Origin: Kudoa neothunni
Lineage: Eukaryota > Animalia > Cnidaria
DNA length: 64,000 nucleotides
Direction: 5' to 3'
Assembly: GCA_964304625.1 (NCBI GenBank)
Contig: OZ199838.1
Coordinates: 12,281,843-12,345,842, forward strand
This document shows positions 11,601 through 54,587 of this stretch, piece after piece. Position numbers and translations under genes: made by a program. How positions within the stretch are numbered: position 1 is the first letter of the stretch; every line of letters starts with the position of its first letter. The notes under the pieces are model-generated. The model was not told where the DNA came from and made no database searches. It saw nothing but the letters and a program-made list of their open reading frames with translations.

Positions 11601-14600
11601 CAAAGCTTACTTAATAGACGAGGAATTTCTAAATTATTTTGACGCTTTTACTTATTTAAATCTGATGTAAACTTTAATTTGAAATTATTTGTTTCATTTT
11701 ATTCATGAAGCATTATCAAATATTAATTATCACTTAAACAAATCGCCCAAAAAATAGTTTACGACATTTACATTGTCATTTATAGGGAGCGAAAGCCTAC
11801 TTTTGAAAGATGAAGAGCTGTCTTAGATTTTTGGATGATCAAGTATAAAAACTTTCATACTTTATTGTTTTTAATATTCTCATGCATTAATTTTATGAAG
11901 AATAAACGGATTATACCAAATTTATGGCATTACTGAGTATAAAAAATTAAGATAGGCTCTGGAATCGATTAAACCCTTAATGCACTATATAGTTCAAGTA
12001 GAAGTGGACCAACTTCCACCATAGTGATCTTAATGAACCATGAAAAATATTCACAAGCATAACAGCAAAAAACTGGTTATCCAATAGAATTAACCAAGTT
12101 TATTGATTTTACTATTTTATGCCAGCTCACTGCGATCCATTAAAAATTGTAACAGATATGCATGAAGAATTTACACAATTCTTTAAATCATAAAATATTA
12201 CTGAATAAATTAAAACCTTTCTGTCTAAGTTTACAACGACTATTGCAATAATTTTTGCAGTAGATAGAGTATTTATCCCAAGCCGGAAAAGGGCCGATAC
12301 TAGTTAATAATTTCTTGGTCTAAGTAAAATTGATTTTAAATTTCGAAAATAAGGAAAACTTACCCAAAAAATTAGAACATTTGAAGGCATTTAAAACGAA
12401 ATTTTATAAAATGAAAAAAATCGGTTACTTACTGGTTATTAACTTCTCAATTGTATAATCCGTTCGAAAATAAAATATGAGTCAAACAAAAGTTTCAAAT
12501 TAATGTAATGTTTTGTGGAAATTCGTGCATAATATATTCTCAATTATATTAATTAAAAATACATGGTCTAAACGACGAGACCCTTCAAATTTTGACTGTA
12601 TAAAATTTATTCCCTGGGCCAAAAAAATGACCAATGTATTTAAATTAAGTGTTCTTTGCGTTCGACTTAATTTCAAATTATTCCTCGAAAATACTCGATG
12701 TCACCTTTTGTAGATTTTACTTGATTATCAATGGTGATTACTAAGATTTAAGCTCGATTTCTTTCACATATCTGTAGGCTAGATGATGAAGTATCCAATA
12801 TGGAGATAAAAGACTAATTTGAGATTAATCAGATACAATTAAAATAACACAAATACTTTGGCTGGTTGGAGAAATATTTAAGATCAACAAAAGCCAATGA
12901 TCGAATAATATGTTTCAATGAATTATCAATAAAACCATCAGGCAACGTTTTAACGGTGTGTTGAATCTTTGTTCCGAATGTACTATAAGAAAGTGGAGAT
13001 GTTATAGCAACTGAAAACACACAATGCAAGTTATTACTTGGAAATAGATTCGAAATTAATGACAGGGTTCTCGTTATGGCAGAAGATTATCGAATTATCC
13101 TCCAATAAAGTGAAACGTGTGTTTGTGGAATCATGCCGACAAATTGACTGGGGATCACAAGGGAACATAATTGATTTGTAGGCGTCGGGCTTAGATATCA
13201 AATCTACTAGCGAATTGAAATATTGGTTGGATCTGGTAGGTGGAATAGCGTTCATGTTGGAAAGGAGCGTTGAGCGATCAACTTTAATTGTCTTCAAAGC
13301 CACAAAAAAACAACGCTTTTTGAATGGAACAGGTGAGCTTATTTCGCATTTGTTTCCTTTCAATAAAAGCTTTAATTGGATTTATATAGAATTTAAGTAG
13401 ATTTTAATAGTTACATCAGACAACTCGAATCCAGCCTTGTATTTGTTGGTGACAAGAGTGGGTAATTTTTTGGTTGGATCCATTGTGTAAGGATGAACAA
13501 ATTTTACCCCTCCAAAAGAGTTATCGTTAATCTCTGCCAACGAATGTTGATTCAGAAGATAGTATTCATTTGGTTGACTTCAAATAGATAATTTAGTCAA
13601 CATAAACTACAAACAAACTTACTTTGATCCACTACTGGTTAATGGTTGTTGTGAAGCGACTAATATGAGTGATTTTTCAGATTCTGTCGTCAGATTATTG
13701 CTGCTATTGCTACGGTTAACTTTGGAAATCGGTTGCGAGTCCATGTTAACAATGCTGATTGGCTTGAAAGTAGGGTCAGATTGTTGGTTCTGGTTGTCCT
13801 GTTGAGACAGACGTAGAACAAATTGTTTTGCATTCTCAACACTCTTTTTCGACAGATGAAGCTGTTGACCCAACCCCGTGGTAAAAAGTGTAGTGTTGGA
13901 GTCCATTGGGTTGATGTTTTCAATGGCTCTCTCCAAACGTTCGTTGGTAGCAGAATTATTACGACTAAGGTCTTGAGAAAGGTTTTCGAACAAATTGTGA
14001 GCTATATCCAAACCCTTGGCGGATATTTCAACGGGTTTACCCAAACCTGTGGTGAAAATTGAAAAATTAGTACTCTTGGTAGTCACAGGTGGGGAATTTT
14101 GAGGAATTTTGCGTTGGGAATCCTCCAATTCTTGGGATATTCCTGCAAAAATGTTTTTCGCTTTCCGTAAACCTTCTGCCGAAAAATTCACCGGCTTTCC
14201 CAAACCAGTTTGGAAGACAATAGCCTCCTTTTTGCCAACCGAACTAGCACTTCGAGGACTACCAACAAAACTCTCAGCATCAACTTTAGGATGCTGAGAA
14301 TGAGCAGACGATCTCGAACTGACTGGAATAGTTGGTGAGAGATTGTAATCACTTATAGAATCGTTAAAGGTGTCATTCATCGTAATAAGGTTGGGGTTTG
14401 GGGAACAGATATCTTCGTTGACTCCTTGGTGATTATCGAAACAGTTTTCAGCAAAATCCAAACGCACTGGTACAAAATTAGTGGAGTCATTTTTGGTAGT
14501 AAAAAGCTGTTGAGATGAAGTATCAAACCTTCTTTTCCTACCACTGATAGACAATGGTGTTGAACATTTCCTGAAACCTGAACTTGGATTAATCGTACAG

Positions 14601-15103
14601 CTACTAATCATAGGTTGTGTGGTTGTATCAACAATCTATAACGAGATATCATTCAACTATTGCACAATTTTATTTTAAAACAACTACAGAGTTTTGAGGA
14701 ACTATTGCCAACGGTTCTACAACACTACTGCAAACTTTATGTTGCCTTTCAACAACTAGCATCAATTTATTATTGAGTGACAAAAAATCCGAATTACCAG
14801 GAGTTTCCATACTATTTCTCCAGAGTACACTTGACTTGTCGAGTGTTATATCGGGAATTCTTGACTTGCCGATTGAATGATTCTCTACAGAGAGATATAT
14901 TTGTATTTCGTTTATTCAGTTAATACCGATAAAAAGATTGAAATCATTGGAATTATTTATTGCTTCCAAAATGGAATCACTAAATAATTTTATATTTGAG
15001 ACAAGTATCAAACTCTGAATACTCGGAATCATCGAAAAATACATCCTCTAAACGAAAAACTGTTAAAATTTTGTAATACGATATATGTACCATCGCTTCC
15101 CAT
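8670..15103 (-). CDS. BRCA2: BRCA2 homolog, compact: 3 BRC repeats, helical domain and OB folds
   Basis: Three FxTGLG(K/Q) BRC repeats in 13619-14611. Helical domain DNSLKHIIRSLA and LSPYWILHHLAYRYVKEIE. OB1 motif IELSDGWYTV, then LNINSTR...KLGF and VVMLKIYP. Alternative start at 15163. Confidence 0.9.
10507..12710 (+). mobile_element. Degenerate Tc1/mariner-like element inside a BRCA2 intron
   Basis: TA|CAAAAGGTGAC ... GTCACCTTTTG|TA (11-bp TIR plus TA TSD). Faint FQ-DN and SP-L transposase traces at ~11450-11620. Removing it leaves an ~78-nt intron. Confidence 0.7.
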
Positions 15104-19800: not shown

Positions 19801-19915
19801 GTAAACCGATCTGTTTCCAAAATCCTATTCAAATGGGACTATTACTGCCAAAACTGGTATTTAAATCTTAATGAATTAACTCACTTCGTTATAATCTCAT
19901 AAAAGAGACCAGAGC

Positions 19916-22900
19916 ATGAGAACTCTAGTGCTTTTGGTTCAAATATTATTTTGTATAAAAACCACTGACCAAATCGATCCAGTTACCACTAACGGTGTCA
20001 TACTTGGGGGTTATCTAAAAAACTACCGTATCACTTACTTTAAAGATGGTGAAAATTATCTTATTGTTCATTACACCTCTAATAATTTCGAATATCGCAA
20101 CTATCAAGACATAACATGTCACATCTCTAATGACAATGGAAAAACATTTAAACTTATTGACGGCATCAAGAGTGATATGGTTATAGACGATATTTATTTT
20201 ATCAAGTCGATCCTTTATTTTGTTCAACGAGCTAAGCGTGCAATAATATGGTCGAACAATTTTGGTAGAAGTCTAAACATCACAGTTCACTCTGGTGACA
20301 TTATCAACATGGTTATTAATCCCGACGATCCCACAACTTATGTGATTATGACTTTTAAATTTGTAATCACAGTTTGATACATAATCAGTTTGAACTTTTT
20401 TCATAGATTTATGAATGCAAAATATGTTATTTTTCCGGAGAAAAATGCATTATACTTAAACTCTGTTTCAAGCATGCCACTTGGTTTTTTATTTTTAATT
20501 GGGATTTAATTAATTTAAATCTCTAGGAAGACAACCAAATCCAATGAGAGCTATCTGTTTTTTATATCTGGTAATTTTTCTTTGTTAGATCATAATTTTA
20601 TATATTTACAGGCTATTGGGGAGTAAGCGTATGGAAATCACCTAAAACAACTCCCACAGACTACCACATATTAACAAGCAAATTTGAATCCATTGTCGAA
20701 AATAATGGCTATATTTTCGCTTCATATGTAAATGTATGTAACTTATATCTCAACACAACTCGTGTAGACAACTAAATGTGATCATGTTCAGATTCTCACA
20801 GGCAACAAACACCTCGGGTTGGTCAACGATGACTTGACATTGAATAAGTTTGAATTTATTACTCGTATTAATGTCACTGTAGGTGTAGATCTATTAAATG
20901 TAAGGTATTAGTTGTTTTATTCAAGGATTTCAGTTTGGTCGAGTTTGCTTGCAATAGAATCTATGTGATAGCTTGGAATCAGCTTCATCCTCTTACCAAG
21001 GTGCTACTTATTGGAGATCTAAAAACCTTCAAATTAAGGCAAGTTGCCGAATTGAATGCATTTTCCAGAAAACAACACGAAATGTGACTCAAATATTATT
21101 ACAATAGTTTAAATTAATTCTTCATAGATTTCTCCAGCAAGACTCTAATATGTCAGAAATTATGTTCAAATATTCAATAGTTACCCGAAAAACTAACAAT
21201 GGCGAATTTATCAGCTATAAACAAACACAAATATCTACTAATTATGGATTCAGCTGGAAAAATGTTAACTTTTATGTGCAAAATCTGCTAGAATGCCAGT
21301 CCTTAAATGTAAATATTTTTTTAATATTTACTGTACACATTAAATTATTTTATAGAATTTGTGTGGTTTGTATCTACTTAGATATGGTGATAATTCCAAA
21401 AAGCATAAGGAAAGTTACGACAACACTATTCCTTGGTTTAAATATTCTAATGGTTCTCAATATCATTCTAAATGATGCTCTCTCAAAAACTTTACTTAGG
21501 TATTGTATTCATCCCTGGTCGATATTATTCCCTGAAATACTTGATGTTATCGTACGATTTTGGACAAAGTTGGTTTGCTGTATATGTTTCTTAAATACGA
21601 TAAATAAAAGATTTACTAATTGATCTAGACATTGAAAGGAGAATATCACACCAACATTATACTGAAAGGTGCCATTATTGTAGCTATATTGACGAAAAAT
21701 CCATCCAAAATATTGTATGTCCTCTTTTGAAGTGTATATTTTTACATTTCAAGGGCAATTTAATGGGTCCTTGGATGCTTTTAGTTTACTATTTATATTA
21801 AAATCTAGATATGCGCTCAATAACTTAAAAATAAATAAATTTCAAAATTTTATTTTTAAAATAACGCGAAAATATTATACTAATTTCATATTTTAGTTAT
21901 AGCACAAACTTTGGCCTTACATGGATAAATTATACTCCTCATCTTAAAGATGGCACCGCCAAAATTATTTTTACACTTGGAAATATAAATGATAGTTTTG
22001 TAAGTGTAGTCTATATGGATAAAAAGTACAAATACAGATCTGCGTTAATCGATTTTTCAACAATGATAGGTGACTTTACTGTAACCTATATATTGTAGAC
22101 ATTAAAAATAATTAGATAGAGAATGCGACCAGGATGATTTTAATATGGTGGAATTATTCAAGATTCATTCGAATGGGACAAAAAGTTGTTTTCTGGGAAA
22201 GTCTCTTGGGGTGTATCGTAGGAAGGTTGATTCAGTTTGCCAAGACACAAAATCCTCTATGACAAGAATCAACTTTTTAACAAGGGAAAAAAGTGATGTT
22301 AATTGCCAATGCAGTTATTTGGATTATATCTGGTAATCGAAGCTTGTTGTACGATCTAAAATGAACTAGCGATCATAACTCAATTATGCATAATGGGCAA
22401 TGTACGGAATTAACAGAGAGTATTCAAAAACGTTGTTCAAATCAAACAGCTTATTGGGTTCCTGCAATCCAACAGTATAGAATTATTCTCACATGTTTGT
22501 GTCGATATTTTGGATTTTAGCTATGTTCTACCTGAAGAAAATACATGTTCTCAAACTGCAGGTCGTATAGGCCAATATGCAATAGAATATGTCCTCGAAG
22601 AACCTTTTATATTTTGTAACAAATCAGGTATAGTATTTAGTTTGAATTTGATGTTAAAAAATTAATAAATATAAAGACAATTATCAGTATATTGTCGTGA
22701 AATCAAAAGACTACTTCGAACTTATCTATTACAGCCATAATACCTATAACATTACCGGAAACTTAATAAATATTAAACTAAATTCTAACCCTAATTTGAA
22801 TTGGGGAATATATGCTGTCAATATTGAAGAGAAGAGTATTTTTGTTGTAGACAATTCATCAGAAAAAGTTTTTAAAGCTCATTGGAACGAAACCGGTATT

Positions 22901-24985
22901 TAGAGCCTTATCACTTACAACACTAATTATATTTAATGTATTTTTCACTCATATGTACAGGAATAACTGAACCTCCAACAGTAATTTTCAAAAATCCATT
23001 ACCAGAAAAAATTGTTAAGCTAGATATGGACCATTTTTCATCAAATCTGGTGATGTTTTACGAGCAAGCTCTGGTTATTCATTCAACTAAAAATTTCTAT
23101 TACAAAATATTTAATTATCAACACACCAACATATTGAAAAATTCATTAAAGTTTAACAAAAAAGAGTAAAAAAATAAACTCTTTCAGCTTTAAATTTAGC
23201 ATAGCTTAAACAACGCAACAATCTCGTATATAATTCAGGAAGCCAATCAAACCTACAGCTACCGTTTCCTTAACGTTTTTGGAGTCGAAAAATTTTCACA
23301 TACGTCCCCCAAGAACTATCCCTATGATACATTTTCATCTGTGGAAAGCCTTTATATACTTAAACCTTCCGAATTTGTTGTTGAATACAATTGTTCTACA
23401 TGCGCCCCTAATGGTAGAATCAACACAATGCCCCTCTATGTATAACTAAGTATTTTATTGGTGAAACATTATTTTTATCAATAAAGATAACACATCCCCA
23501 CTACAATAACATATATGTGAACAAACTTGGTGCCAGCAATGTGATTTTTTTAAATAACGGACAAAGTTTATCCACGGTGGACCATCATTATTTATTCCCA
23601 ATAACAGAACAGCATGAGATTCAATTTATTCACCTAAACAAAGATAAACAAAGTATTGATTAAAAAAGATAATGAGTTAAAGATATATAATAAAAGATTG
23701 TGATTGCAAGATGTTATGCTTGGATACCAACTTCGATGGCAACGTTTGTGAGAACCACACTGGACTTTCATTCAACGTAGAAAAAAATAATATCCATAGC
23801 GCAGATGAAATTCCAAAAATTATAGGTAACAAAATCACTATATTACATACAAACTGAATGTTCTTAAGATTTATTTTGTGACAAGAATAACTCATTTATA
23901 TGTCTCAACGGCCAATGTATTGATGCAAACCAAGTATGTGATGGTTCTTATGACTGCATCGACAGTACAGATGAACTGAATTGTCCAAGTGAACAAATAC
24001 TTTTCAACTATATGATTACAATTAATCTAGATTGTCCTGATGGATATCTCTGCCCAGGAAGCTTAATATGTCTATCTTCAGCTCAATATTGCGATGGTTA
24101 CCCTGGTTGTTTCGATAAATCCGATGAAATCAACTGCTTCAAAAATAGTTAATAGCAGAATGTTTTTTTTTTGAAATAGTGTATATCTAAGATGGTACAT
24201 TTCCGCAGAAATACGATGATTATGAAGAACAATATACGATAATGCATGGTGTGCATAAAGAAGCAGATTGTTCCGGTCATCTCGAAAATCCTATGTGTAA
24301 ATGTAATTGACTTGTTATTCTAATTATTGGATTGATGTTGATATTTATAGATAAAGCTTGCAGTTACGCTGAATTTGAATGCAAAAAAACTAAGCAGTGT
24401 TTGCCGCTAGAACTTAGATGTGATGGAAACCTCGATTGTCAGGATGAGTCGGATGAAAATGAATGTATTTACTGATAGATAATGTAAATTATTAATTTGC
24501 CTTAGGTGCAACCACTCAATGTTCATTGAAATGTCTTGTTGGGGGCTGTCTAGTGAAGAGTCAGAGGTGCAATGGCTTTGAAGATTGTGTTCACGGCGAG
24601 GATGAATTTTCTTGTAGTAATTACTAATTGTTTGTATGAAATACTACATTTTCGGAATAGACTTTCAAGTAATGTCTTCAAACACTTCTTCCATTTTGTA
24701 TACTATTGTTTCCTGTTTTATTTTGTTTATACTCTTTTGTTGTGTTGCCTTCATGATCACCGACATCTATAATTATATCAGAAATTACACTGGAAGATTA
24801 AATGAGGAATACAATCAAGGTGCATTTAAATAGATTTATATTCTTTTAATAAACTCAATTTAGATATCGAAAATACTTATATACGACGTAGGCCAAGTTT
24901 TACCCGAAGGATGGTGCGACTAAACCAAAGATTAGACCATAGGTACATTGAAGACACTTACAGAGTTATTTTGCCAACATTCTGA
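19916..24985 (+). CDS. Vps10p-domain / LDL-receptor class A type I membrane receptor (SorLA/SORL1-like), many short exons
   Basis: Signal peptide. Asp-box repeats [32 protein letters not shown]. 10CC-like region [18 protein letters not shown]...[12 protein letters not shown]-like segment, then four LDLa repeats (e.g. [28 protein letters not shown]). [24 protein letters not shown]. Cytoplasmic tail ends YRVILPTF*. Confidence 0.88.
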
Positions 24986-27229: not shown

Positions 27230-28420
27230 CAATGAGAATGAATTTGTTCATTTATTACCGAAATAAGCATCTTTAAAGTACACAATAACTGTAGGAAATG
27301 TCAAGGAACAGTCATTTAATATATCGGAATAGTTGGCGATATTACTACAAACAGATATAGAAAAGAAACTTCCATTTTAAAACCCTATTTCTCATAAATA
27401 TAAAATTTAGAGTCTAAGATTTGTTGGAGTTAGCATATTCCTGGATGGTGGATAAAAATATCGTTAACTAAAATAAAACTAACAGTCACTCTTCCCAATC
27501 AATGACTATTGTCACTATCCAAGTTAATTAGTAGCGGATAGTTTAGACTTTAAGTAAATTGATAATAGAACGGAAAGCTAATCTTAAAGAGTAAGATGTC
27601 CAAATATTGCAAGATAACGTATAGCAGAGTACATGACGTTGAGAGCACAAATATTGGGGGAGCCTGGACAATGTGGCATAGTGGTGTTAGGGCGAGATCG
27701 CATAATTTGAGGTTGCAAGTTCGAAGCCTAGTCCGGGCGTTCCTGTACTCCTAATCCAAAATTAAGTAGGAAGGTTGTAATAATCTCAAAGATATATGAT
27801 TTATCGTGGCCTTGCTTGCAGTTGGGAGGAGAGCCTGGCGGTGGGATAGATCTTGGGCGCTCATAAACGCCTGGGTACAGGAACGAAATACCACCCAGTA
27901 GGGGGTTTCCATAGAGCTGACGCCCGCATTCAGACTAGTTCTGGGTTAGTCCATGGTAAGGTTGTGGTGGTGGTGCTCCGAAACGAGGATGTTTAGTGGA
28001 TTAAAATCCCACACTGCCGCATAAACATAAGTCGCCTTAATATGACGTTGCGGTGCCTAAAGCGTAAATGGGAAAGGTCTAACCAGCCCAAATTTCACAA
28101 CCTAATAAGTTTCGCCAGGAGTTTCACCTTGTAAACAAAAAAACAACGAATTTTGAGGGATGTGGAAAGGAAACCAGAAAAAAATGTTTTAAGTAGAAAT
28201 TTTCGACGATATCGCCGAGGCATCCACTAAAAAATTATAGCATACCTTCAACCTGGCTCTACTGTCATAACCGCTTGATTCAAAAGTCAGGGAACAACCC
28301 ATCATTTCTTTACTCGCCTCGCTTTAAACCGCAATGTAGATTAAGTGAATACTATCACATGAGCCCATACTAAAAGCATTGAGGAAGTTCGAAGTTCTTA
28401 CAAATACAAAATATCACCAA
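27230..28420 (+). mobile_element. Merlin (IS1016/ISXO2-like) transposase relic, copy A, interrupted by a SINE
   Basis: CRKC zinc-knuckle trace (~27290), QPGSTVIT (~28250) and AHTKSIE (~28365). Homologous to 32380-33050. Confidence 0.6.
27662..28145 (+). mobile_element. tRNA-Met-derived SINE, copy 1
   Basis: Head 27662-27738 has acceptor stem GCCTGGA/TCCGGGC, A box TGGCATAGTGG, a CATAA anticodon loop and B box GTTCGAAGC. GC-rich body, then tail CACCTTGTAAACAAAAAAAC. Homologous copy at 33067-33507. Confidence 0.8.
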
Positions 28421-28717
28421 GGAATAGAACATCTTCGGTTAATAAACGTGGTTCTGTCAACATGTAGGGCATCAATTAATATCTCGATGAATTTCAATGG
28501 AGAGGAAAAGTCTGATTTATGGTGATAAAAATATTTTCATTAAAATTTTGTGGTTGAAAGTAAGTGAGACTAATATTATATTCATAAAGTGTATTCTATA
28601 TGCGCTTACCCTTTCATATGTAAGAATTAGGGGATTTATATCAATGTGAAACCTCGAAAAATATTCCAATCTTAATTATAAAACGTAACAGTTCGTATCT
28701 AACTGTATTATAAATAT

Positions 28718-31700
28718 CTAATTTTTGTTTCTCATGTATCCAAAATAGAATCCTATTCCAATTACCACTATCATAACTGGGACCACGACAGCAATAATTC
28801 TAAGTGGAAAAATTATTACAGCAGATTAGATTTTTACTACATTGTATTCTTTGACCTAAAAAATCATAAATAAGTCTAATACACACTTCATATTACGTTG
28901 ATTTATTTGACGTTTCTCCTAAACATTAATTATAGAAATTAACCCAATATATTTATTTTAGGAATACCTCTTTTTATCACAGCAGTTCCAAAAATTTTCT
29001 CATCGTTGCTATGAATTACCCTCACTCGATAATCATTGGTATCTTCAATATCAGAAATTGAGATCTGCTTACAGGATGGGAATGCAGTACAATCTTGACC
29101 AATGACCATGCATTTTTTCACAATCGGTTTAGCGACGTCTTCCCAATTTATTAATTCCCATTTACACAGGGAATTTTCATTCACACCTTGAGGTAGAATA
29201 GTTTCAATTTTTAATGTTTTATCTTCACGTACAATCACTACAGTTATTTGTTTGCTCACGTCCTCATTATGTACAAGTGATGGATCTAAATTAAATTATT
29301 TATAACGTGAATGAATGAACATGTTAATTTGATTTTCTACCGAAATAAATAATTAAAAGAATGAACATATTTATTAATTAAAAAAGAATAAATTTAGTGT
29401 AATAATATTGACTTTTCGGTATAGATATGGATACTTCCGCCGATCTTCCAATAGCAGTTATTAACAATTTATACTCTTTATCCGCTTCGTATCCATTGGT
29501 CACAACGATACTATTGCATAAAGGCACCTGAGTGCATGACGAAAATTGTACAGCAGTATTTGTTGATGGAGTTGTGGGTGTAGTTGGTTTAGGGACAGCG
29601 TTCGCTGCTCTCGCGACTTTCGTTTCATGAGATGCAGATGGTAATGGTAATTTTTGTATTGAACTAAGTGTGTCCTTAACGCTGGGATTTATTTCATCTT
29701 TAAATATTCTCGAAGCGGCGCTTGGTGTTGGATTTAAAGTGGGTGGAGGACAAACAAAAACCTCCTTGAATGTTTTATCTTTTCTTTGAAGTTTAAATTC
29801 GCATTCTGCATCTGGATCGGGAGTAGATAGGGTGCCTACCACTTTAAATCCCTTATCCAAGAAACTTGATGTGAGTGTAAGTGTCGCCATACCTTATCAA
29901 AATCAATAATATTATTTGGAAGTTACAAAATACTAGTTTTAATTCCAGAGTATATTTTCGGTTCGTACTCTTTGTGTGCAATAACTTTGATGTCATATGT
30001 TGATCCTGGAATGAGATTTGTGATAGTTTTTGACTCCTTGCAATGTCCTCTGCAGGGGTAGCTGTCAATGCAATGTGCATTGATGAATGCATTTTTGTCT
30101 GTTATACTAATGTAATATGAACATGTGGCTTGAGTTTTATCTGTCGTTTCATCACCGTCTAGTGCTTTAATCGTAGCTGTCGACTCCGTTACGGTGGGAT
30201 TAGTGGGGCTAAGTACAGATCCCACTTTAGGGTCTACATAATACTATTTAGTAATCTTTTCAAAATATTTAATTTACTTGTGCTAACAAACAGATATTCA
30301 TTAAACTCCGTTGGACTGCTTATACCACTTGATGCAATCTCAATCATCATAGGTCTTCCTTCAGTGAACCCTTGGATGGTCAGGCTACTCTCGCATCCAT
30401 TTCCACAAGGAGAACTACCGTCGCAGTTCGTTGATGTTCCTTGCTTGGTTTCCGGTCTTGGTTTATCAGCTGGAAAATGTTTTAGGGTGCATGAGGTGAA
30501 CTTTGGCTCATTTGTTGGGTTAAAAGGAGACGCATTTAGCGTAGCGCCAGTAGTTGTAATAGTCTTAAACAAACCATCTTGCGGCTCAACAATGACTAAA
30601 TAGCGTTTAAAACCATAACACCTATATTAACATACCAAATTTCGTAGTTTTATATCCATCATAATGATCTCCCGTTAGTTTAATGTTATGGTGTCTGGTT
30701 TGAATCGAAATTTCAACGAGTACTTTATTGTCTGCTAATGTAAGCTCAAAGTTGTCACATGGCGCATAGCATTCCTTTCCTTCAGCTCCGCAAATATAAG
30801 AAAATGGAGTTTTATTTGTAATCGTGGCATCTCTTATACCAAATCGGCATATTTCAGTTGGGAAATTATTTGTAAATTTAAGATTGTATTTATTTTTCTC
30901 ATTGGCCGATTTAAAGGCCACATAATGTTGTGGTTTGAAAACATCGATATTCTTTTTCATATATGAATTTGGCATATTATAAAAGAAGCTTGGATAGTTT
31001 TCACATTGCATTTCATAATACGGAATCATTAAGTTAAATTCTACGTCGATATCACTAGCAGTAGCACAGTCGGCGCCAATTGCTCCTTCGTTATATTGAA
31101 CCCCCTTGTACTTAACGGGGCATTTCACATTAGAACATGTTGTTGTAGAAAATTTTAATTTCTGATCGGCTGAGGTTGATATTGCAACTTGAGGATTCAC
31201 GAGTAATGCTAAATGATTATGAATATTTGTATTGTTAAAATAATTGGTACGTATTTCGAATCCAAAAACATTTCCTCCTGTAATTCCAGCTGCTGCTGCC
31301 GTAGCATCATTTCCGACAAAAACATAGATATATTTGTTTCTTGGGGAGAGTATGTTATATGTCAATTTATTTCCATCATTGTTGCATGGAATCACGCATT
31401 TATTCGGATGTCCGTTAGCATTTCCAGGGCATGTATCTATGTCCTCATAAGCTGTTAAACCACTGTTAGGTTTCTTCATTAGACAATGCTTTTCAGCTCC
31501 ATAATCTGTACCACTCAACTTAAGTTTTAATTTTTTTTCCCTAGCATCATCAATAATTTGGTAAGAAAGAACTTTCGCATCGTTTGCTGTTGTTGCTGCT
31601 GGTAGGCTATCATCGGCAGGATAATAATAATGGATATCTATTAATAATATTAATTTATGAATATAATGCCTTATATACTCAACAAAATAGTCACTACTAT

Positions 31701-31724
31701 TAAAATATTTATCGCTGGTCTCAT
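28718..31724 (-). CDS. Novel Cys-patterned, FN3-like multidomain type I membrane protein, paralog A
   Basis: Signal peptide MRPAINILIVVTILLNIHYYYPA. About 7 modules of 4 Cys on phase-1 exons, one with FN3-like TITNLIPGSTYDIKVIA. Two micro-exons (22 and 15 nt). TM IIIAVVVPVMIVVIGIGFYFG and tail YMRNKN*. All introns GT-AG; reading frame intact. Confidence 0.85.
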
Positions 31725-32379
31725 AAGTTTATAAAAAATTCAAATAAGATTAATTTTATAACTTTTCGGCAATAAAAGGACGACAATATAACGAAAATAT
31801 TTGTTTACATAAATTGCATTCATCATAGTATAACATTCTTGTTATGTATATCAATAAATATTATACTAATAGTATTAGCTAAGTTCTTCCAAATATATGA
31901 TTACCTACTCCTTATCCTATATTTTTATTAAATTTATCATATTTTATCTTTTTAAAGTAAACAATCTAAAAATTTCTGTTTTTGCCTCTTGAGTATATTG
32001 GCTTAACGACTAATGATCATTATTACTATAGAATTATAAATGTGTCCAAGATTGTTACAGAAAATATTAAATGACAAATTTTTGTCGTAATTGGTTAAAC
32101 AATCTGACGAAATAATCTAAGATACTATTCCATTGATAAATTTTATACATTAGTAATACTCGTTTTATTAAAATTGATAACAACTCATTATTTTAAGTAA
32201 TTTAGTCTGAAGAAAATTTAATAATTAATTCTCTGTAATTTTTTAGTAAATAACATAGCTAATTAGCATACTATGAGGAATACTTCATTTTTTTAATGTA
32301 AATAAAAAAAATGTTTAAAATCATCGAATAACGTAATCAAACCTCAGGATGAGAAAATATGCACAAAACCAAAACCATG

Positions 32380-33050
32380 CAATAGCAGGGTCAAATTGTA
32401 TTAGCATCTTCATCCTTCCGAGTAATTATATGAAGTGTCATGAACCAGCCATTTAATACATTGAAAAATTAGCAATACTACTAGAATAGGTGAATAAAAG
32501 AAACGTATATTTTTGAGGCGCTAATTCTGATTAATATGAAAATTTAACTTCATAATTATTCATGTTAACATATTATTGGTCGGCGGGCCAAAAAAGAGTT
32601 AATTGGGCACAATTAGCAACTATTGCCATTATCTTCGCCAGCTAGTATCGGGTTTTTTAGACTTTAAATGAATAATATTAGAGGAAAGAAAATAGTTGTT
32701 GAGATTGATGAATCTAGATTTGTCATAGTAAAACATAACAGAGGGCTTGTCATTAATGGAACATGAGTTCTTGGAGATGTAAAAAAGTACACCAGAAAAA
32801 AAGATGCATTTAAAAGAATTTTGTTACGGAACGGCTGAAGCATTCATCAAAAAATTATAGCGTATTTTCTATCTAGCTCTGTTATCATATCTGAGTGATT
32901 CAAGAGTAACGGAGCAATCCACAATTTCTGTACTTACTTCGCAGTAAACCATAACATAGAATATGTAAATATTGCCATAAGAGCATATACAAGAACAATT
33001 AAATGAACTCGGGGTGTTATCAAATACAAAATATCACAAAGAAAAAACCA
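32380..33050 (+). mobile_element. Merlin (IS1016/ISXO2-like) transposase relic, copy B
   Basis: IVVEIDESRFVIVKHNRG...GT*VLG (~32692-32778) and VNHNIEYVN...AYTRTI (~32944-33000) match the Merlin motifs VEIDES, KYNRG, WVFG, VNH and HTxxIE. Confidence 0.8.
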
Positions 33051-33066
33051 TCTATGATTTATGTAA

Positions 33067-33507
33067 TTTTTTTGTTTTCAAGGTAAAACCCCTGGCGCAA
33101 CTTATTGAAGCGTGGAGTTATGGCTGGTTAGACATTTCCATTAATTCTGTAAGCATCGCAGGATTAATAACATCTACCTCCTCGCCTCTTAGCTTTCTGC
33201 GGTACTGTGGGAGTTTAAACTATTAGTACCCCCGTCGGTGGGGCCACCACCATCCTAAACCCTACCCATATAACGACTTGGACTCAATAGAGATTTCAAG
33301 AGTGTTAATATACCCCCCTCTGCTAGATCGACCTATAACTGCAGGTGAAATTATGCTTATAATGCGATCATATTCTATCAAAAGTTCCCATTATGGAATG
33401 AAAAAACGCTCTAATGAAAGCAGTAGACTGATCAGCGATGAAAATCGGACTCAGTACCTCCGGTTATTGCGTCCAGTCACCACACCATATGGCTATATGT
33501 CATCGGC
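33067..33507 (-). mobile_element. tRNA-derived SINE, copy 2 (same family as 27662-28145)
   Basis: Minus strand carries A box TAGCCATATGG and B box GAGTCCGATTT. Body GGATGGTGGTGG...TAAACTCCCACAGTACCGC and tail GGGGTTTTACCTTGAAAACAAAAAAA align with copy 1. Confidence 0.72.
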
Positions 33508-33791
33508 TCCGGTTAATAAACGTAGTTCTGTCAACATGAATGGCATCAATTAATATCTCAGTGAATTTCAATGGAGAAGAAAAATCTGATTTGTGGTGAT
33601 AAAAATATTTTCATTAAAATTTTGTGGTTGAAAGTAAGTGAGACTAATATTATATTCATAAAGTGTATTCTATATGCGCTTACCCTTTCATATGTAAGAA
33701 TTAGGGGATTTATATCAATGTGAAACCTCGAAAAATATTCCAATCTTAATTATAAAACGTAACAGTTCGTATCTAACTGTATTATAAATAT

Positions 33792-36700
33792 CTAATTTTT
33801 GTTTCTCATGTATCCAAAATAGAATCCTATTCCAATTACCGCTATCACAACTGGAACCACGACAGCAATAATTCTAAGTGGAAAAATTATTACAGCAGAT
33901 TAGATTTTTACTACATTGTATTCTTTGACCTAAAAAATCTTAAATAAGTCTAATACATACTTCATATTACGTTGATTTATTTGACGTTTCTCCTAAACAT
34001 TAATTATAGAAATTAACCCAATATATTTATTTTAGGAATACCTCTTTTTATCACAGCAGTTCCAAAAATTTTCTCATCGTTGCTATGAATTACCCTCACT
34101 CGATAATCATTGGTATCTTCAATATCAGAAATTGAGATCTGCTTACAGGATGGGAATGCAGTACAATCTTGACCAATGGCCATGCATTTTTTCACAATCG
34201 GTTTAGCGACGTCTTCCCAATTTATTAATTCCCATTTACACAGGGAATTTTCATTCACACCTTGAGGTAGAATAGTTTCAATTTTTAATGTTTTATCTTC
34301 ACGTACAATCACTACAGTTATTTGTTTGCTCACGTCCTCATTATGTACAAGTGATGGATCTAAATTAAATTATTTATAACGTGAATGAATGAACATGTTA
34401 ATTTGATTTTCTACCGAAATAAATAATTAAAAGAATGAACATATTTATTAATTAAAAAAGAATAAATTTAGTGTAATAATATTGACTTTTCGGTATAGAT
34501 ATGGATACTTCCGCCGATCTTCCAATAGCAGTTATTAACAATTTATACTCTTTATCCGCTTCGTATCCATTGGTCACAACGATACTATTGCATAAAGGCA
34601 CCTGAGTGCATGACGAAAATTGTACAGCAGTATTTGTTGATGGAGTTGTGGGTGTAGTTGGTTTAGGGACAGCGTTCGCTGCTCTCGCGACTTTCGTTTC
34701 ATGAGATGCAGATGGTAATGGTAATTTTTGTATTGAACTAAGTGTGTCCTTAACGCTGGTATCTATTTCATCTTCAAGTATTCTCGAAGTAGCGCTTGGT
34801 GTTGGATTTAAAGTGGGTGGAGGACAAACAAAAACCTCCTTGAATGTTTTATCTTTTCTTTGAAGTTTAAATTCACATTCTGCATCTGGATCGGGAGTAG
34901 ATAGGGTGCCTACCACTTTGAAACCCTTATCCAAGAAACTTGATGTGAGTGTAAGTGTCGCCGTACCTTATCAAAATCAATAATATTATTCGGAAGTCAG
35001 AAAATACTAGTTTTAATTCCAGAGTATATTTTCGGTTCGTACTCTTTGTGTGCAATAACTTTGATGTCATATGTTGATCCTGGAATGAGATTTGTGATAG
35101 TTTTTGACTCCTTGCAATGTCCTCTGCAGGGGTAGCTGTCAATGCAATGTGCATCGATGAACGCATTTTTGCCTGTTATACTAATGTAATATGAACATGT
35201 GGCTTGACTTGTTTCTGTATCTTCAGCGCCTGCTAATGCTTTAACTACAGCTGTCGACTCGGTTACGACTGGAATGTTGGAGCCAAATACTGACCCTTCT
35301 TTAGATTCTACATGATATAATTTAGCAATATTTTTCGGAATATGTCAATTACTTGTCCCAACAAACAAATATTCGTAACGGTTTCCTGTAGTTAGCGTAG
35401 CACTTGACGCAATCTCAATCATCATAGGTCTTCCTTCGGTAAACCCGTGGATCGTCAGATTATCCACGCATGTTGTTGCACAAGAAGTGCCGCTGTCACA
35501 ATTCGCTCCTGTCCCCGCTCCGGCAGCTGGTCTTGGTTTATCTGCAGGGAAGTGTTTTATGACGCACTCATTAAATGTAGAATCACCATTTGGTTTAAAA
35601 AGAGACGCATTTAACGTAACAACAGTAGTTGTAATAGTCTTAAACAAACCACCTTGTGGCTCAATAATGACTAAATGGCGATTTAAATAACTAACTTTGC
35701 TATAATATACCAAATTTTGTAATTTTATATCCATCGTAATCGGTCCCCGCTAGTTGTATATTATGGTGTCTGGTTTGGATCGAAATATCGACGAGTACTT
35801 TATTGTCTGCTAATGTAAGCTCAATGTTGTCACATGGCGCATAGCATTCCTTTCCTGCAGTTCCGCAAACATGTGAAAATGAAGATCTAGATGGAACTGT
35901 GGCATCTCTTATACCAAATCGACATATTTCAGTTGGGAAATTATTTGTAAATCTAAGATTGTATTTGTTTTTAACCTCAGCCGATTTAAAAGCCACATAA
36001 TATTGTGGTTTGAAAACATCGATATTCTTTTTCATATATTGATTTGGCATATTATAAAAGAAGCTTGGATACTTTTCACACTGCATTTCATAATACGGAA
36101 TCATCAAGTCAAATTCCACTTGAATATCGCTAGCAGTAGCACAGCCGGCGCCAGCTGCTCCTTCGTTATATTGAACCCCCTTGTACTTAACGGGGCAATT
36201 CACATTAGAACATGTTGTTGTAGAAAATTTTAATTTCTGATCGGCTGAGGTTGATATTGCAACTTGAGGGTTCACGAGTAATGCTAAATAATTATGAAAA
36301 TTTTGATCAATCAAATAATTGTTACGTATTTCGAATCCGAAAACATTTCCTCCTGTAGTTCCAGCTGAAACGGCTTGAGCATCATTTCCGACAAAAACAT
36401 AGATATATTTGTTTCTTGGGGAGAGTATGTTATACGCCAATTTATTTTCATTATTGTTGCATGGAATCACGCATTTAGTCGAATACCCGCTAGCACTTCT
36501 AGGGCATGTATTTATGTCCTCATAAGCTGTTAAACCACTGTTAGGTTTCTTCATTAGACAATGCTTTTCAGCTCCATAATCTGTACCACCCAACTTAAGA
36601 TGTACTTTATTGCCGGTATCGTCAATAATTTTATAGGAGAGAACTTTTGCATCGTTTGCTGTTACTGCTGGTGGGCTATCATCGGCAGAATAATAATAGT

Positions 36701-36793
36701 GGATATCTGTTAATAATATAAATTTATGAATATAATGTCTTATATACTCAACAAAATAGCCACTACTATTAAAATATTTATCGCTGGTCTCAT
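33792..36793 (-). CDS. Novel Cys-patterned, FN3-like multidomain type I membrane protein, paralog B
   Basis: Same exon structure, Cys pattern and YMRNKN tail as paralog A, with a near-identical TM segment. Reading frame intact, including exon ~35008-35307, which the ORF track misses because it has no start codon. Confidence 0.85.
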
Positions 36794-37745
36794 AAGTTTC
36801 TAAAAAATTCAAATAAGATTAATTTTATAATTTTTCGGAAATAAAAGGACGACAATATACCGAAAACTTTTATTTACTTAAATGGTACTCAACGATGTGT
36901 AGTAATCATTTTTATGTATACCAATAAATATTATACTAATAGTATTAGTTTTCTTATTATAATTATCCGACTATATATTCCTTAGACTTGATTTATACTG
37001 CATTTACCATATTTAACTCTCATAGTAGGGAATTGAACAATTTCTGTTTTAAACTATTCATATGTATTGTTTTGATACGTAATGTTATGATCATTACAGA
37101 ATTTTAAATAGGACATGTTTTGTTACAGAAAATACTAAATGACTAATGTCGCCATTATTCGTATAAGAATCAGGCAAAATGATCTTAAATACTATTCTAT
37201 TAATAAATTTTATGAGACAGAAATGCTCATTTTCTTAAAATAGATAACAACTCATTGTGTAAAATAATCTACTCTGAAGGAAAGGCAAGAATAATTCCTT
37301 ACAATTTTTTAATAAATCTTTTAGCATATACAAATAAATTTATAATTTTCAAAATATTATATCAACTTTTTTTTAACCATTTAGAATAGATACATCCAGA
37401 CCTTAGCATTAAGTAATTTTCCGTTAACTCTTTAAATTATTTTAGATTTGCACATTTGAGAATTTAGTAAATATAATAAATGTTTCATAATAATATATAT
37501 TTTATAAATTGATATATATTACTAAATGTTTTGTATTTATTTCAAGGTTCGAAATTGCTGTATTGAATTTATTTTGTGCGGTATATTTGACCATGTTCAG
37601 AGCAAAAAAATTTTCGGGAAAAGTTTATGGAAACTGATAATTATAATATATCTTAAACACTTAAAGTTTTTAAGAGTTGACACGCCAAAATATGTGATCA
37701 TAATTGAGCATATATTTTACAATGACAATTATTGAAAAACAATTA

Positions 37746-43596: not shown

Positions 43597-46500
43597 CTAT
43601 TGCTCTTTCTTTCGAAAAAGAAAGTGTTGTTTGTGATGTGACGATGCTTTGGAGGGATGTGACCTTTTCTTTTTATCAAATTCCAGATACATTAGGCCAT
43701 CACTTCCCGAGAATTTGGAAAGTGCACTTTTTCCAAATCTTTGAGACGATGAGCTATTGAGAGACAAATCTCTATCGGTGGTGCCATCGTCACTCTCCAA
43801 TACTTCCTTATCAGTAGCAGCATAGATCTAGAATAATTACCAATTTCGAGCATATAAAAAGTCGCTCTAATAATTCACTTTAGCTATAAGTTCTTGTTGG
43901 TCTTGTTTTGACGAGTAATACAAATTAGGCTAAATAATGTTGATTTAACGTTCTTTATTCAAAAAACCAACAACAGAAAGTACCGTTTTGTCCACTTCAT
44001 CAATGATATTGTTAACAACTTTATAACTGTAGCCTTGGTTGATAAGGAAACGTTGTCTCTTGGCAGCAAAAACACTTTCTTCAGTGTCACTCGAAATAAG
44101 ACTGTAAAAGAAAGCGTTATATTCTTCAGCAATAGATTCTAATAAAAAACTAGTACGATCACAGTTATTTCAAATTAGTCACCTTTTTTTGCTCTTAAGA
44201 TTCTTCCCAAACGTTGAGCTTCTTGTCTTCTAGAGCCACCATGAGAAGAAATCTAATAAGAAATGTAGCTATAATAACCGCCAAATAATTACTTGTATCA
44301 GCACATTAGCTTCAGGCATATCAAATGATGTGTCTCCAACCTTAAAAATTAATTGAAAAAATCCGAGCAATTATTCCATCACTATACTTTGGAAATAAAT
44401 ATAGTGTTGACTAGTGGATTATTGACAAAGTTTTGGATAATTTTTAGGCGCTCGTTTTGCGAAGTAGGTCCATAAATGTATGGTCTGAGTGAGGAATTAT
44501 AAAAAATGTTACTTAAATAAGAAACAACTTGTTGAGACGTATAGCGTAGAATTTCAATGCGAAAACATTATCAGAAAACACTATAATTTTGTCATTTCGT
44601 TGTTCATGGTATTTGATTAGAAACTAACATCAACAGAATTCAGCCACGTAGTTCATAGCACAGTGTAGATTGATTACTTGGCAAATTCGGAATTTATTTG
44701 GATTCATCAAATAAAATAACTAAATTTCGAACCATTAAAATAGAAAAACATAATAAATATAATTTAAATTTTATATTATCCTTATATAAAACAATTCTTT
44801 TAACAACAAAATAACAATTTCGTTATTTTAATCAGCGATGGAAAATACCATTCTTCTTTTAGGGGAGTGTTTCAAGTATTCTGAAAAGAATTCCGGAGTC
44901 ATTGGACACCAAACTTCGGCGCATTGTACTCTTGCAATGTAACGATTCTTTTGCAATTCCATCCAATTGGCTTCGTATAATTTTGGGCCGATAAGAAAAT
45001 TCAAATCCTGAATTTTGTCGTCCTCTCTCACAAGTGTAGCAGTCAATCCAATTTTACAATGAGCATTGATAACTTTAATCAATTGGATTAAGTTAGATGG
45101 ATATTAGAAGTAGAAAGTTACTTGTTAACACACGCCTAAAATGCCTAGCAGGTATAGTATGTACCTCTAATTTTAAAATCTTAGAAAACATGTAACCACG
45201 GTGAGGTAGATACCATCGAGAATCATTAGACCCCATTCTTTTGATTTGAGAAATTCGAGAATCTGCTCGGATTCAAACGACCTTTTGGTGCTATGGGAAA
45301 GCATAGTGTACGTTGTGATGGCGACCTGACAAACTAAATAAGTTTTACATAAGTGATTAGTCACCTGTGTAAAACCTTTGTATTTGTCTTTGGAGTCGGA
45401 GGTGAAACGGCAAATTGTGGAATCATCAATAGTGGACCATAGGCGAAATTGCGATCTCCATTGTTCGACAGAAACACCTAAGATCAAGGGTGATAAACTC
45501 ATAATTGTTTTTGTGTGAGGTAAATGGTTACCAGAGTTGCAAATAACTAAACACTTTTTCTTAACTGTACAGGCAGCGGTTACGCCGACAAGCGATTTCC
45601 CAGCACCACACGGAAGCACAATAATACCAGATCTAGCTCGACCATTACCAAACACCTTGCTAAGACATTTCTCCTACAAACAACGTATAAATCGACGAGC
45701 TTTGAATCCATAAAATACTTGATATGGACGTAGGATTGTCATTGGTTTTAAGTCAATTCTTGAGATTACACACAAATTAACTCACCAAGTTACAATTGTG
45801 CTATAACATAAATACATAATATCGGGGTTGACAGTGTCATTTTTAAAATCATATTCAGCCAAAAGTGGATAATCCAACTCAATACACCTAATAACATATT
45901 AAATCTCAAATTTTTCATATAAAAATGAATTAAAAATATTTAAATGTTATACATTTAATACTTTTAATACTTTTAACTTATAATAAAAGTCTAATAAAAT
46001 AAGTTTCCTTTAATAGAATTTATGGAATTTTTGTAAAAATGAATAATAAATATTTCAAATAATTTCCTAACATGACCTAAGAATATTAAACACTCAATAA
46101 ACTATCGATTTAATTTGTTTATAAATTAATTTTTTTATGTAAATATAAATAATGATTTACCTTTTAAACGACAAACTTTTTTTTTGCTAGCGTTAGGCGG
46201 TAAAGTTAAATCCTATGCCAAGTACGCTGCAGGGTCAATATTTAAATTTAAAAATTATAATCTATAATCTTAGGAATTCCTATTTATGGGTTACGAATAT
46301 AGTTCAATTTATAAAACAAATTAGATTTAATTAATCTCTACATACAATTATATTTATAGAGAACAGAAATTGGAAAAATAGTCAAATTGTACTTATACAC
46401 AAGATTAAATTTTATCGGGTAAATAAACAGTCTCATAATCAAAATCCTTATCTAAAAATAATATTTCAAACTTGAATTAACAATTATTCATGTTAATTTT

Positions 46501-54541: not shown

Positions 54542-54587
54542 AGTGCTGCAACTGTAAAAATGCTTTTAAAGATTTTTCGTTAATTAA

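What the first reader, a model, noticed from the sequence alone, without database searches (positions are those of the whole stretch)
28718..36793. Candidate variant surface antigen or allorecognition system: two novel type I membrane proteins with hypervariable loops on a fixed Cys/FN3-like scaffold
Seen in the sequence: two intact paralogs with a signal peptide, ~7 modules of ~100 aa each carrying C...C-x(5-10)-C-x(3-5)-C, a C-terminal TM and only a 6-aa tail (YMRNKN). In the exon at ~30277-30597 vs ~35352-35672, about 42 of ~107 residues differ, with no indels. The differences cluster in patches (PFNPTNEPK/LFKPNGDST, ETKQGTST/AAGAGTGA, GSSPCGNGCESS/SGTSCATTCVDN, GISSPTEFN/ATLTTGNRY) between invariant blocks (KHFPADKPRP, GFTEGRPMMIEIASS, all Cys). 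The membrane-proximal module differs by a single residue. Established knowledge: variable distal domains with a conserved TM and very short tail are the design of parasite coat proteins such as Giardia VSPs. Tandem polymorphic Ig/FN3-like receptors underlie Hydractinia allorecognition (Alr). Inference: this is a host-facing or self/non-self recognition family under diversifying selection. I do not recognise the family.
Basis: partly seen in the sequence, partly recalled or inferred. Interest (0 to 1): 0.9.

Follow-up and report, generated by a model that had tools for sequence, protein, structure and literature searches.

The report
Huge FN3 surface-protein family in Kudoa
The two genes are real members of an apparently undescribed family of more than 200 membrane-anchored surface proteins in a fish-muscle parasite (almost certainly the myxozoan Kudoa neothunni); their outer loops differ while neighbouring copies keep overwriting the inner stalk, which makes them good but untested candidates for variable surface antigens.

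Summary
Observation confirmed. There are two intact 10-exon genes (846 and 844 aa) with a signal-like start, seven 4-Cys modules, one TM helix and a 5-6 aa tail. Exon 4 differs at 42/106 residues, exon 7 at 1. The genome (3 chromosomes plus 18 kb, 40.26 Mb) fits Kudoa neothunni. The pair belongs to a family of at least 215 loci; 97-99% of matched exons are stop-free, and relatives occur in five other samples. Exon 4 folds as FN3, and 32 of the 42 differences lie in the BC, distal CC', C'E and FG loops. dS follows dN (exon 4 dS 0.62, dN 0.28; exon 7 about 0), and the 3' introns are nearly identical, so gene conversion homogenises the stalk. However, the same columns vary in independent clusters, and the stalk is the homogenised part in every cluster, which suggests the distal difference is being kept. 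A dN/dS>1 class survives a recombination control only in exon 2, and narrowly. It is neither a VSP nor an Alr by their defining features. No RNA was found, so switching is untested. The scan noted this family before on other DNA of this genome.

The parts
28718..31724 (-). Gene A, 846 aa, 10 exons: 31724-31679, 31637-31251, 31208-30636, 30595-30278, 30233-29934, 29892-29413, 29285-28968, 28918-28897, 28855-28841, 28799-28718
   Evidence: same exon layout in 25 paralogs
33792..36793 (-). Gene B, 844 aa, 10 exons: 36793-36748, 36706-36326, 36283-35711, 35670-35353, 35307-35008, 34966-34487, 34359-34042, 33992-33971, 33929-33915, 33873-33792
31679..31724 (-). Exon 1 of A: hydrophobic signal-peptide-like leader (B: 36748-36793)
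   Evidence: Kyte-Doolittle 1.46; a hydrophobic 15-aa exon 1 found in 21 of 25 modelled genes; no SignalP available
31251..31637 (-). Exon 2 of A = module 1 (outermost); variable, and the best evidence for dN/dS>1 sites
30636..31208 (-). Exon 3 of A = modules 2+3; predicted as two beta-sandwiches (low confidence)
   Evidence: AF2 pLDDT 63; best Foldseek hits are tandem-FN3 cytokine-receptor ectodomains, TM about 0.3
30278..30595 (-). Exon 4 of A = module 4, the divergence peak; FN3 fold with variable BC, distal CC', C'E and FG loops (B: 35353-35670)
   Evidence: A/B nt identity 0.72
29934..30233 (-). Exon 5 of A = module 5, recognisable fn3; A and B become near-identical from about 30100 downwards
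   Evidence: Pfam fn3 E=3.5e-4, below cut-off
29413..29892 (-). Exon 6 of A = module 6 with a Pro/Thr/Ser-rich insert
28968..29285 (-). Exon 7 of A = membrane-proximal module 7, 1 aa different from B
28718..28799 (-). Exon 10 of A: TM helix with GxG motif, then FYFGY and a 5-6 aa basic tail; near-invariant across the family
28433..30100 (.). Homogenised 3' tract, 93-100% identical per 100 nt to about 33507-35170, including introns and the 3' flank (gene-conversion tract)
31745..31800 (-). Conserved upstream elements about 65 and 30 nt before the ATG (GTTATATTGTC-like; TAATCT), shared within the subfamily; a related 16-mer precedes 15 genes of the C2 arrays
   Evidence: promoter function is inferred
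32252..33506 (.). Spacer between B and A, with a decayed transposase-like remnant and a short high-copy repeat (about 33026-33193)

Best explanation
A and B are two members of a lineage-specific, host-facing repertoire of surface proteins in a myxozoan fish parasite. Each gene has its own upstream elements and encodes a rod of seven disulfide-stapled FN3 modules, anchored by one TM helix with no signalling tail. SHOWN: architecture, FN3 fold of module 4, family size, intact exons, mosaic exchange between neighbouring copies, a homogenised stalk (modules 6-7, TM, 3' introns), and variable loops at the same positions in independent clusters. INFERRED: tandem duplication creates copies. Segmental gene conversion then homogenises them, and conversions are tolerated in the stalk but selected against, or reshuffled, in modules 1-4, so each copy shows a different outer face on a common stalk. 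INFERRED, UNTESTED: the proteins coat parasite cells in the fish, and the diversity is favoured by host antibodies or receptors, with different subsets expressed per cell, stage or infection.
For: Family of at least 215 loci on all three chromosomes; only 1-4 of 150 matched exons per search contain a stop. That is about 4% relative to the 5,316 genes predicted for K. neothunni (PMC12239612). Invariant TM/tail with no signalling motif. Identity within the C2 9.8-Mb array: exon 4 0.65, exon 2 0.72, exon 7 0.96; the stalk is also the conserved part in the two other groups. PHI-type recombination test p=0.003 in exons 2-6 of that array; nearest neighbours change from exon to exon; identical tracts up to 372 nt. 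A/B exon 4 identity (0.72) equals that to dispersed paralogs (0.67-0.70), while flanking exons are 0.89-0.90; such a divergence peak under conversion is a described footprint of selection to keep copies different (PMC3924837). Column variability correlates between independent clusters in exons 2-5 (rho 0.38-0.53) but not exon 7 (0.05). Variable columns defined in one cluster have dN/dS 0.58-0.76 in the other for exons 2 and 4, against 0.20-0.25 for the rest. M8 vs M8a in exon 2: 2dlnL 13.5 and 9.0, omega about 3 on 8-10% of sites; 0 of 41 mosaic null simulations reached 13.5. Antigenic variation is reported in myxozoans with the mechanism unknown (bioRxiv 10.64898/2026.02.11.705288).
Against: No RNA or protein data: no RNA run held the sequence, and two raw runs had no reads. 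Whole-exon dN/dS is below 0.5 in exons 2-4 in all three groups. The null reached 12.5, so all other site-model signals in exons 2-4 are within reach of recombination artefact. The exon-5 signal (19.2) sits on two exon-edge codons. Exon 4 in A's own subfamily is not significant (p=0.14). FN3 loops vary under relaxed constraint anyway. No expression site, silent-cassette archive or exclusively subtelomeric layout was seen. The host stage that expresses the genes (fish or annelid) is unknown.
Confidence: 0.55

Rival explanations
1. A co-expressed repertoire of adhesins or ligand-binding decoys. Each paralog binds a different host molecule (matrix, cell receptors, cytokines) through its FN3 loops, and diversity reflects ligand range, not immune switching.
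For: The variable loops (BC, C'E/DE, FG) are those used as binding loops in engineered FN3 binders (established knowledge). Exon 3's best fold hits are tandem-FN3 cytokine receptors, E 3e-4. The tail cannot signal. Deep subfamilies at about 40-50% identity persist.
Against: TM-scores to cytokine receptors are only about 0.3 on a pLDDT-63 model, and there is no WSxWS or RGD. Rapid mosaic reshuffling among more than 200 copies suits escape better than fixed ligand specificities.
Confidence: 0.2
2. A parasite self-recognition code like clustered protocadherins, Dscam or Alr. Paralog-specific homophilic binding through modules 1-4 lets cells of the cell-in-cell plasmodium or mating partners tell self from non-self.
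For: Myxozoans are cnidarians, and Alr proteins contain an FN3-like domain with extra cysteines (PMC9546547). A variable distal part on a homogenised proximal part, shaped by conversion, is described for protocadherin clusters (reference list of PMC3924837; details from memory).
Against: No Ig V- or I-set domain was found in the modules folded, and there is no ITAM/ITIM or cytoplasmic domain. The family is dispersed over three chromosomes instead of one complex. No allelic variation was seen in exon 4 of A in the source sample.
Confidence: 0.13
3. Neutral birth-and-death expansion of a structural coat or adhesion gene needed in high dosage. Loops drift under relaxed constraint, and the 3' bias reflects where conversion tracts start, with diverged parts escaping conversion mechanically.
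For: dS tracks dN along the gene. Variable-column dN/dS stays below 1 on average. The null simulations come close to the observed test values.
Against: More than 200 copies are kept intact in a reduced genome. The exon-2 signal exceeds all 41 nulls. The loops of modules 6-7 show no elevated class.
Confidence: 0.1
4. Assembly artefact: A and B are two haplotypes placed in tandem.
For: The assembly was built from low-coverage reads with haplotypic duplication purged (PMC12239612). No listed contig spans the whole stretch.
Against: In run X1, contigs tile A's 5' end, the spacer and B's 3' end. Depth is 5.4-6.7 for the spacer and A-specific pieces and 9.7 for the shared 3' tract, as expected for two copies. 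The flanks differ, and tandem arrays of up to 11 copies exist elsewhere. The chain passes one short high-copy repeat, so it is not proof.
Confidence: 0.02

Closest known systems
Diplomonad VSPs and the 18 VSP-like genes of Sphaerospora molnari
   Same: Signal peptide, Cys-containing variable ectodomain, conserved single TM, very short basic tail, multigene family in a parasite
   Different: 3.3% Cys, no CXXC or CXC, FN3 beta-sandwich modules on phase-1 exons, at least 215 copies; switching not shown
Hydractinia Alr family
   Same: Cnidarian type I membrane proteins, one domain per exon, FN3-like fold with extra disulfides, clustered paralogs
   Different: No V- or I-set Ig domain found, seven FN3-like modules, no ITAM/ITIM tail, dispersed genome-wide, allelic polymorphism not shown
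Clustered protocadherins and Dscam
   Same: Tandem beta-sandwich rods with distal variable and proximal homogenised parts; conversion among neighbours
   Different: FN3 not cadherin or Ig; self-contained genes with no shared constant exons; no cytoplasmic domain
Plasmodium var/rif/stevor and trypanosome VSG repertoires
   Same: Hundreds of surface-protein genes diversified by segmental exchange, partly near chromosome ends (from established knowledge)
   Different: Unrelated fold; an animal parasite; mostly intact genes, not a pseudogene archive; expression control unknown
FN3 domains of fibronectin, tenascin, receptor PTPs and class I cytokine receptors
   Same: Seven-strand FN3 topology (VIA Z 7.9, rmsd 2.8 A over 83 residues to 1fnh); EF-loop L-x-x-G-x-x-Y-like motif
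   Different: Four conserved Cys per module, almost no Trp (2 in 846 aa), no WSxWS or RGD, no enzyme or signalling tail

Membership tests
VSP (diplomonad-type) | Cys-rich (>5-10%) with at least 5-6 CXXC/CXC motifs | tested here: not met
   3.3% Cys, 0 CXXC, 0 CXC; definition
VSP (diplomonad-type) | Signal peptide, single C-terminal TM, short conserved tail | tested here: met
   the tail is xKNKN/S-like and does not match the S. molnari motif [KR]X[KR]XK[KR]
Variant surface antigen system (functional class) | Large family of intact paralogs with variable outer and conserved inner parts | tested here: met
Variant surface antigen system (functional class) | Diversification by recombination or conversion | tested here: met
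Variant surface antigen system (functional class) | Positive selection on exposed sites | tested here: inconclusive
   exon 2 passes a mosaic null narrowly, others do not
Variant surface antigen system (functional class) | Surface expression, mutually exclusive expression and switching | not testable with these tools
   no RNA run holds the sequence
Hydractinia Alr | 1-3 V/I-set Ig domains plus one FN3-like spacer | tested here: not met
   module 4 is FN3, modules 2-3 are FN3-like, module 5 has a weak fn3 hit; modules 1, 6 and 7 were not folded; definition
Hydractinia Alr | Cytoplasmic tail, often with ITAM/ITIM | tested here: not met
   5-6 aa tail in all 24 modelled genes with a TM; a few Alr tails are also under 14 aa
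Hydractinia Alr | High allelic polymorphism and homophilic binding | not testable with these tools
   only one infected sample holds the DNA
FN3 superfamily | Seven-strand FN3 topology | tested here: met
   AF2 pLDDT 77; the top Foldseek and VIA rows are FN3 (Z at most 7.9, E at least 0.015); Atlas feature hits FN3 0.93; each is modest alone
Class I cytokine receptors | WSxWS motif and Box1 cytoplasmic domain | tested here: not met
   no WSxWS, no cytoplasmic domain

The most novel reading that the evidence does not exclude
A metazoan parasite runs true antigenic variation from more than 200 self-contained genes for a natural monobody-like FN3 rod. One or a few are expressed per cell and switched, and new variants are made by segmental conversion of loop-encoding tracts. 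This would be a VSG/var-scale system built independently on an animal fold inside Cnidaria.
Probability: 0.3. Interest if true: 0.93.

Novelty: new variant of a known kind. Interest (0 to 1): 0.72.

Why it matters
Antigenic variation has been reported in myxozoans without a known mechanism. The K. neothunni genome paper does not mention this family: it has no occurrence of fibronectin, transmembrane, surface or paralog. My literature searches found no description of it. A repertoire of more than 200 intact genes in a genome with about 5,300 predicted genes gives named candidates, which makes the question directly testable by RNA-seq and serology. The near-invariant stalk is a natural target for diagnostics or antibodies against a fish parasite. 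The family also shows how an FN3 scaffold is diversified in nature.

Tried and rejected
Sequence searches: the 5.8-billion-protein word search with exons 2-3 of A found nothing. Pfam on the exon-4 alignment and a PDB sequence search gave nothing significant. Profile-profile comparison between modules gave no signal; HMM cross-searches link exons 4 and 5 (E 4e-7) and weakly others. P0014 (4,048 aa, bacterial DUF11 repeats) is a false positive. Sphaerospora molnari was rejected as the source (40 contigs, 7 chromosomes). I could not name the organisms of the outside relatives: the accessions are not in the paper library, and the SNF5 neighbour had only unnamed hits. One upstream pattern was mistyped and is uninformative.
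Full report
1. Observation. The window holds a tandem duplication: 28433-32251 matches 33507-37317 at 89%. Both copies give a clean 10-exon model on the minus strand, 846 aa (A) and 844 aa (B). All introns are GT-AG and 40-49 nt except one of 127 nt, and the module exons are bounded by phase-1 introns. Each protein has a hydrophobic leader, 28 cysteines in seven groups of four, a TM helix near residues 819-840 and the tail YMRNKN. The differences are clustered (33 runs, p=1e-4). The quoted Cys spacing fits five modules; modules 2 and 6 differ. The model is inferred from sequence and from the same layout in 25 paralogs; no RNA confirms it.

2. Organism. The assembly has 40,260,978 bases: contigs of 17.15, 12.04 and 11.05 Mb plus 18 kb. 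The window is about 30% GC. This fits Kudoa neothunni, assembled from tuna reads: 40.2 Mb, N50 12.0 Mb, three chromosomes, a circular mitochondrion, GC 30.4%, median intron 49 nt (PMC12239612). The runs holding the DNA come from one 2021 sample whose species label is shared with very large WGS runs, as expected for a host label. The identification is by inference from these numbers, not by a named record.

3. Family. Merging by hand the two exon-7 searches gives about 216 distinct places, and the union of all tables gives about 240 loci. They lie in arrays on all three chromosomes, some near the ends (C3 0.04-0.46 Mb, C3 10.8-11.0 Mb, C1 16.3-16.9 Mb) and many internal. Only 1-4 of 150 matches per single-exon search contain a stop. 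Of 25 genes modelled from fetched DNA, 21 are complete for exons 2-7, one is cut by my tile end, and three lack a model for one exon. The TM and tail are near-invariant. Each gene has conserved elements upstream of its own ATG. One 16-mer occurs 16 times in the genome, 15 of them in front of genes of the C2 arrays. So these are self-contained genes, not cassettes. A profile of exon 3 found 17 plausible relatives among 1.84 billion representatives, plus one bacterial false positive. The nine I looked up are unnamed ENA or Logan proteins. The ten I traced to contigs come from five other samples. Contigs L023 and L027 keep the exon order; L027 ends in a TM with a basic tail and is 17% GC, so it is another species. 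None of those looked up is an NCBI-annotated protein, which suggests a lineage-restricted family; I could not name those organisms.

4. Fold. AlphaFold2 on the exon-4 alignment gives a seven-strand sandwich (pLDDT 77). Foldseek and VIA-align rank FN3 domains first throughout (best Z 7.9, rmsd 2.8 A, 83 residues, fibronectin). The ESM Atlas agrees, and exon 5 has a weak Pfam fn3 hit. Exon 3 gives two sandwiches at low confidence, closest to tandem-FN3 cytokine-receptor ectodomains with TM about 0.3. There is no WSxWS motif. Of the 42 A/B differences, 32 fall in 42 residues of the BC, distal CC', C'E and FG loops, against 10 in the other 63 residues (the CC' split was made after seeing the data). 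BC, DE and FG are the loops at one pole of FN3 that engineered binders use (established knowledge).

5. What makes the gradient. Between A and B, dS/dN is 0.19/0.10, 0.20/0.08, 0.62/0.28, 0.18/0.11, 0.04/0.02 and 0/0.004 for exons 2 to 7. The last four introns differ at 2 of 258 sites, against 30 of 125 for the three introns around exons 3 and 4. So the conserved stalk is a recent gene-conversion tract, and 42 versus 1 is not in itself evidence of selection. In the 11-gene array at C2 9.8 Mb, recombination is significant in every exon, nearest neighbours change from exon to exon, and identical tracts reach 372 nt in exon 3.

6. Is difference being kept? Three results say probably. First, the stalk is the homogenised part in all three groups, and exon 4 is the dS peak in the A/B pair and the 9.8-Mb array. 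A and B are as far apart in exon 4 as from dispersed paralogs (0.72 vs 0.67-0.70), with 0.89-0.90 on either side. A peak of divergence under conversion is a described footprint of selection to keep duplicates different (PMC3924837), though escape from conversion can also be mechanical. Second, the same columns vary in independent clusters: rho is 0.53 in exon 4, 0.38-0.41 in exons 2, 3 and 5, and 0.05 in exon 7. Variable columns defined in one cluster have dN/dS 0.58-0.76 in the other for exons 2 and 4, against 0.20-0.25 elsewhere, with no split in exons 6-7 (power there is low). Third, my M8 vs M8a tests give 2dlnL 13.5 and 9.0 for exon 2, 12.5 and 5.1 for exon 3, and 7.1 and 1.2 for exon 4. 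Simulations without positive selection but with mosaic trees reached up to 12.5 in 41 runs, so only exon 2 of the array passes, narrowly. The 19.2 in exon 5 rests on two codons at the exon edge. Positive selection is suggested, not shown.

7. Artefact check. In the source run, contigs tile A's 5' end, the spacer and B's 3' end at depth 5.4-6.7. The tract shared by A and B collapses at 9.7, as two copies would. The chain crosses one short high-copy repeat, so a long read is still wanted. An RNA run and a DNA run of the host label gave no reads (no test).

8. Mechanism and comparison. The most likely reading is a host-facing variant repertoire (0.55). The rivals are a co-expressed adhesin or decoy set (0.2), a homophilic self-recognition code (0.13), neutral expansion (0.1) and artefact (0.02). 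It is built like a VSP or var-type system but is not a VSP (3.3% Cys, no CXXC). It is not an Alr either: no Ig domain was found, it has no tail, and it is dispersed. Myxozoan antigenic variation is reported with unknown mechanism, and the candidates named so far in S. molnari are different proteins in 18-27 copies. I found no paper describing this family.

9. Earlier scan notes. After forming this reading I found that the scan had noted the same family on other DNA of this genome, and this stretch from overlapping windows. Those notes agree on Kudoa, about 200 copies and conversion; they are not independent support. Added here: the loop mapping, the cross-cluster test, the recombination-controlled site test, outside relatives and the read-depth check.

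10. Limits. Genome DNA was limited to about 190 kb. There are no expression or population data.

Verdict: real, a new variant of a known kind; interest 0.72.

Noticed in passing
L001:1330-3082 (G000:C2 about 5.426 Mb): The only 18S rRNA match found in the assembly is a 3' fragment (model positions 1158-1823) followed by ITS1/5.8S-like sequence. It breaks off abruptly against non-rDNA carrying an ORF with two C2H2-like zinc fingers, in the opposite orientation to the rRNA. From memory the junction resembles the 18S target site of R7/R8 retroelements; possibly a site-specific insertion.
   Followed up: partly
window 32630-33053 and 28166-28434: Decayed transposase-like remnants lie just 3' of both B and A (69% identical to each other). 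One reads VEIDES..GR..VLG, Merlin/IS1595-like from memory; Pfam gave no hit on the 31-aa piece. They may mark the duplication unit.
   Followed up: partly
window 33026-33193 and 28049-28143: Short high-copy repeat (contig depth 270-340) with an inverted, 78%-identical copy 5 kb away; MITE-like.
   Followed up: no
window 53579-54565 and 55212-55823 (-): piggyBac-like transposase fragments (DDE_Tnp_1_7, E 3e-14 and 5e-27).
   Followed up: partly
window 13619-14635 (-): A BRCA2-repeat-containing exon (E 4e-14), likely a compact BRCA2 gene.
   Followed up: partly
window 19895-24149 (+): Vps10/BNR-like and LDL-receptor class A exons: SorLA-like receptor.
   Followed up: partly
window 44831-45673 (-), 51569-52111 (+), 1615-3150 (-): XPB-like helicase (identity from memory; weak ResIII/SNF2 hits), a homeodomain gene (E 3e-20), and a proteasome Rpn5-like gene (from memory).
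   Followed up: no
G000:C1:13258309-13259023: Two adjacent module-7 matches: a family member with a duplicated membrane-proximal module.
   Followed up: no
L016:2809-5415 vs L016:7190-9796 (C2 9.84-9.85 Mb): Two array members are identical over exons 2-6 but differ in exon 7 and the TM: a very recent duplication or conversion, or a collapsed haplotype.
   Followed up: partly
L026:63-1502: A distant relative from another sample encodes several modules in one 479-aa open frame, with an exon-2-like module after them: other architectures exist in the wider family.
   Followed up: no
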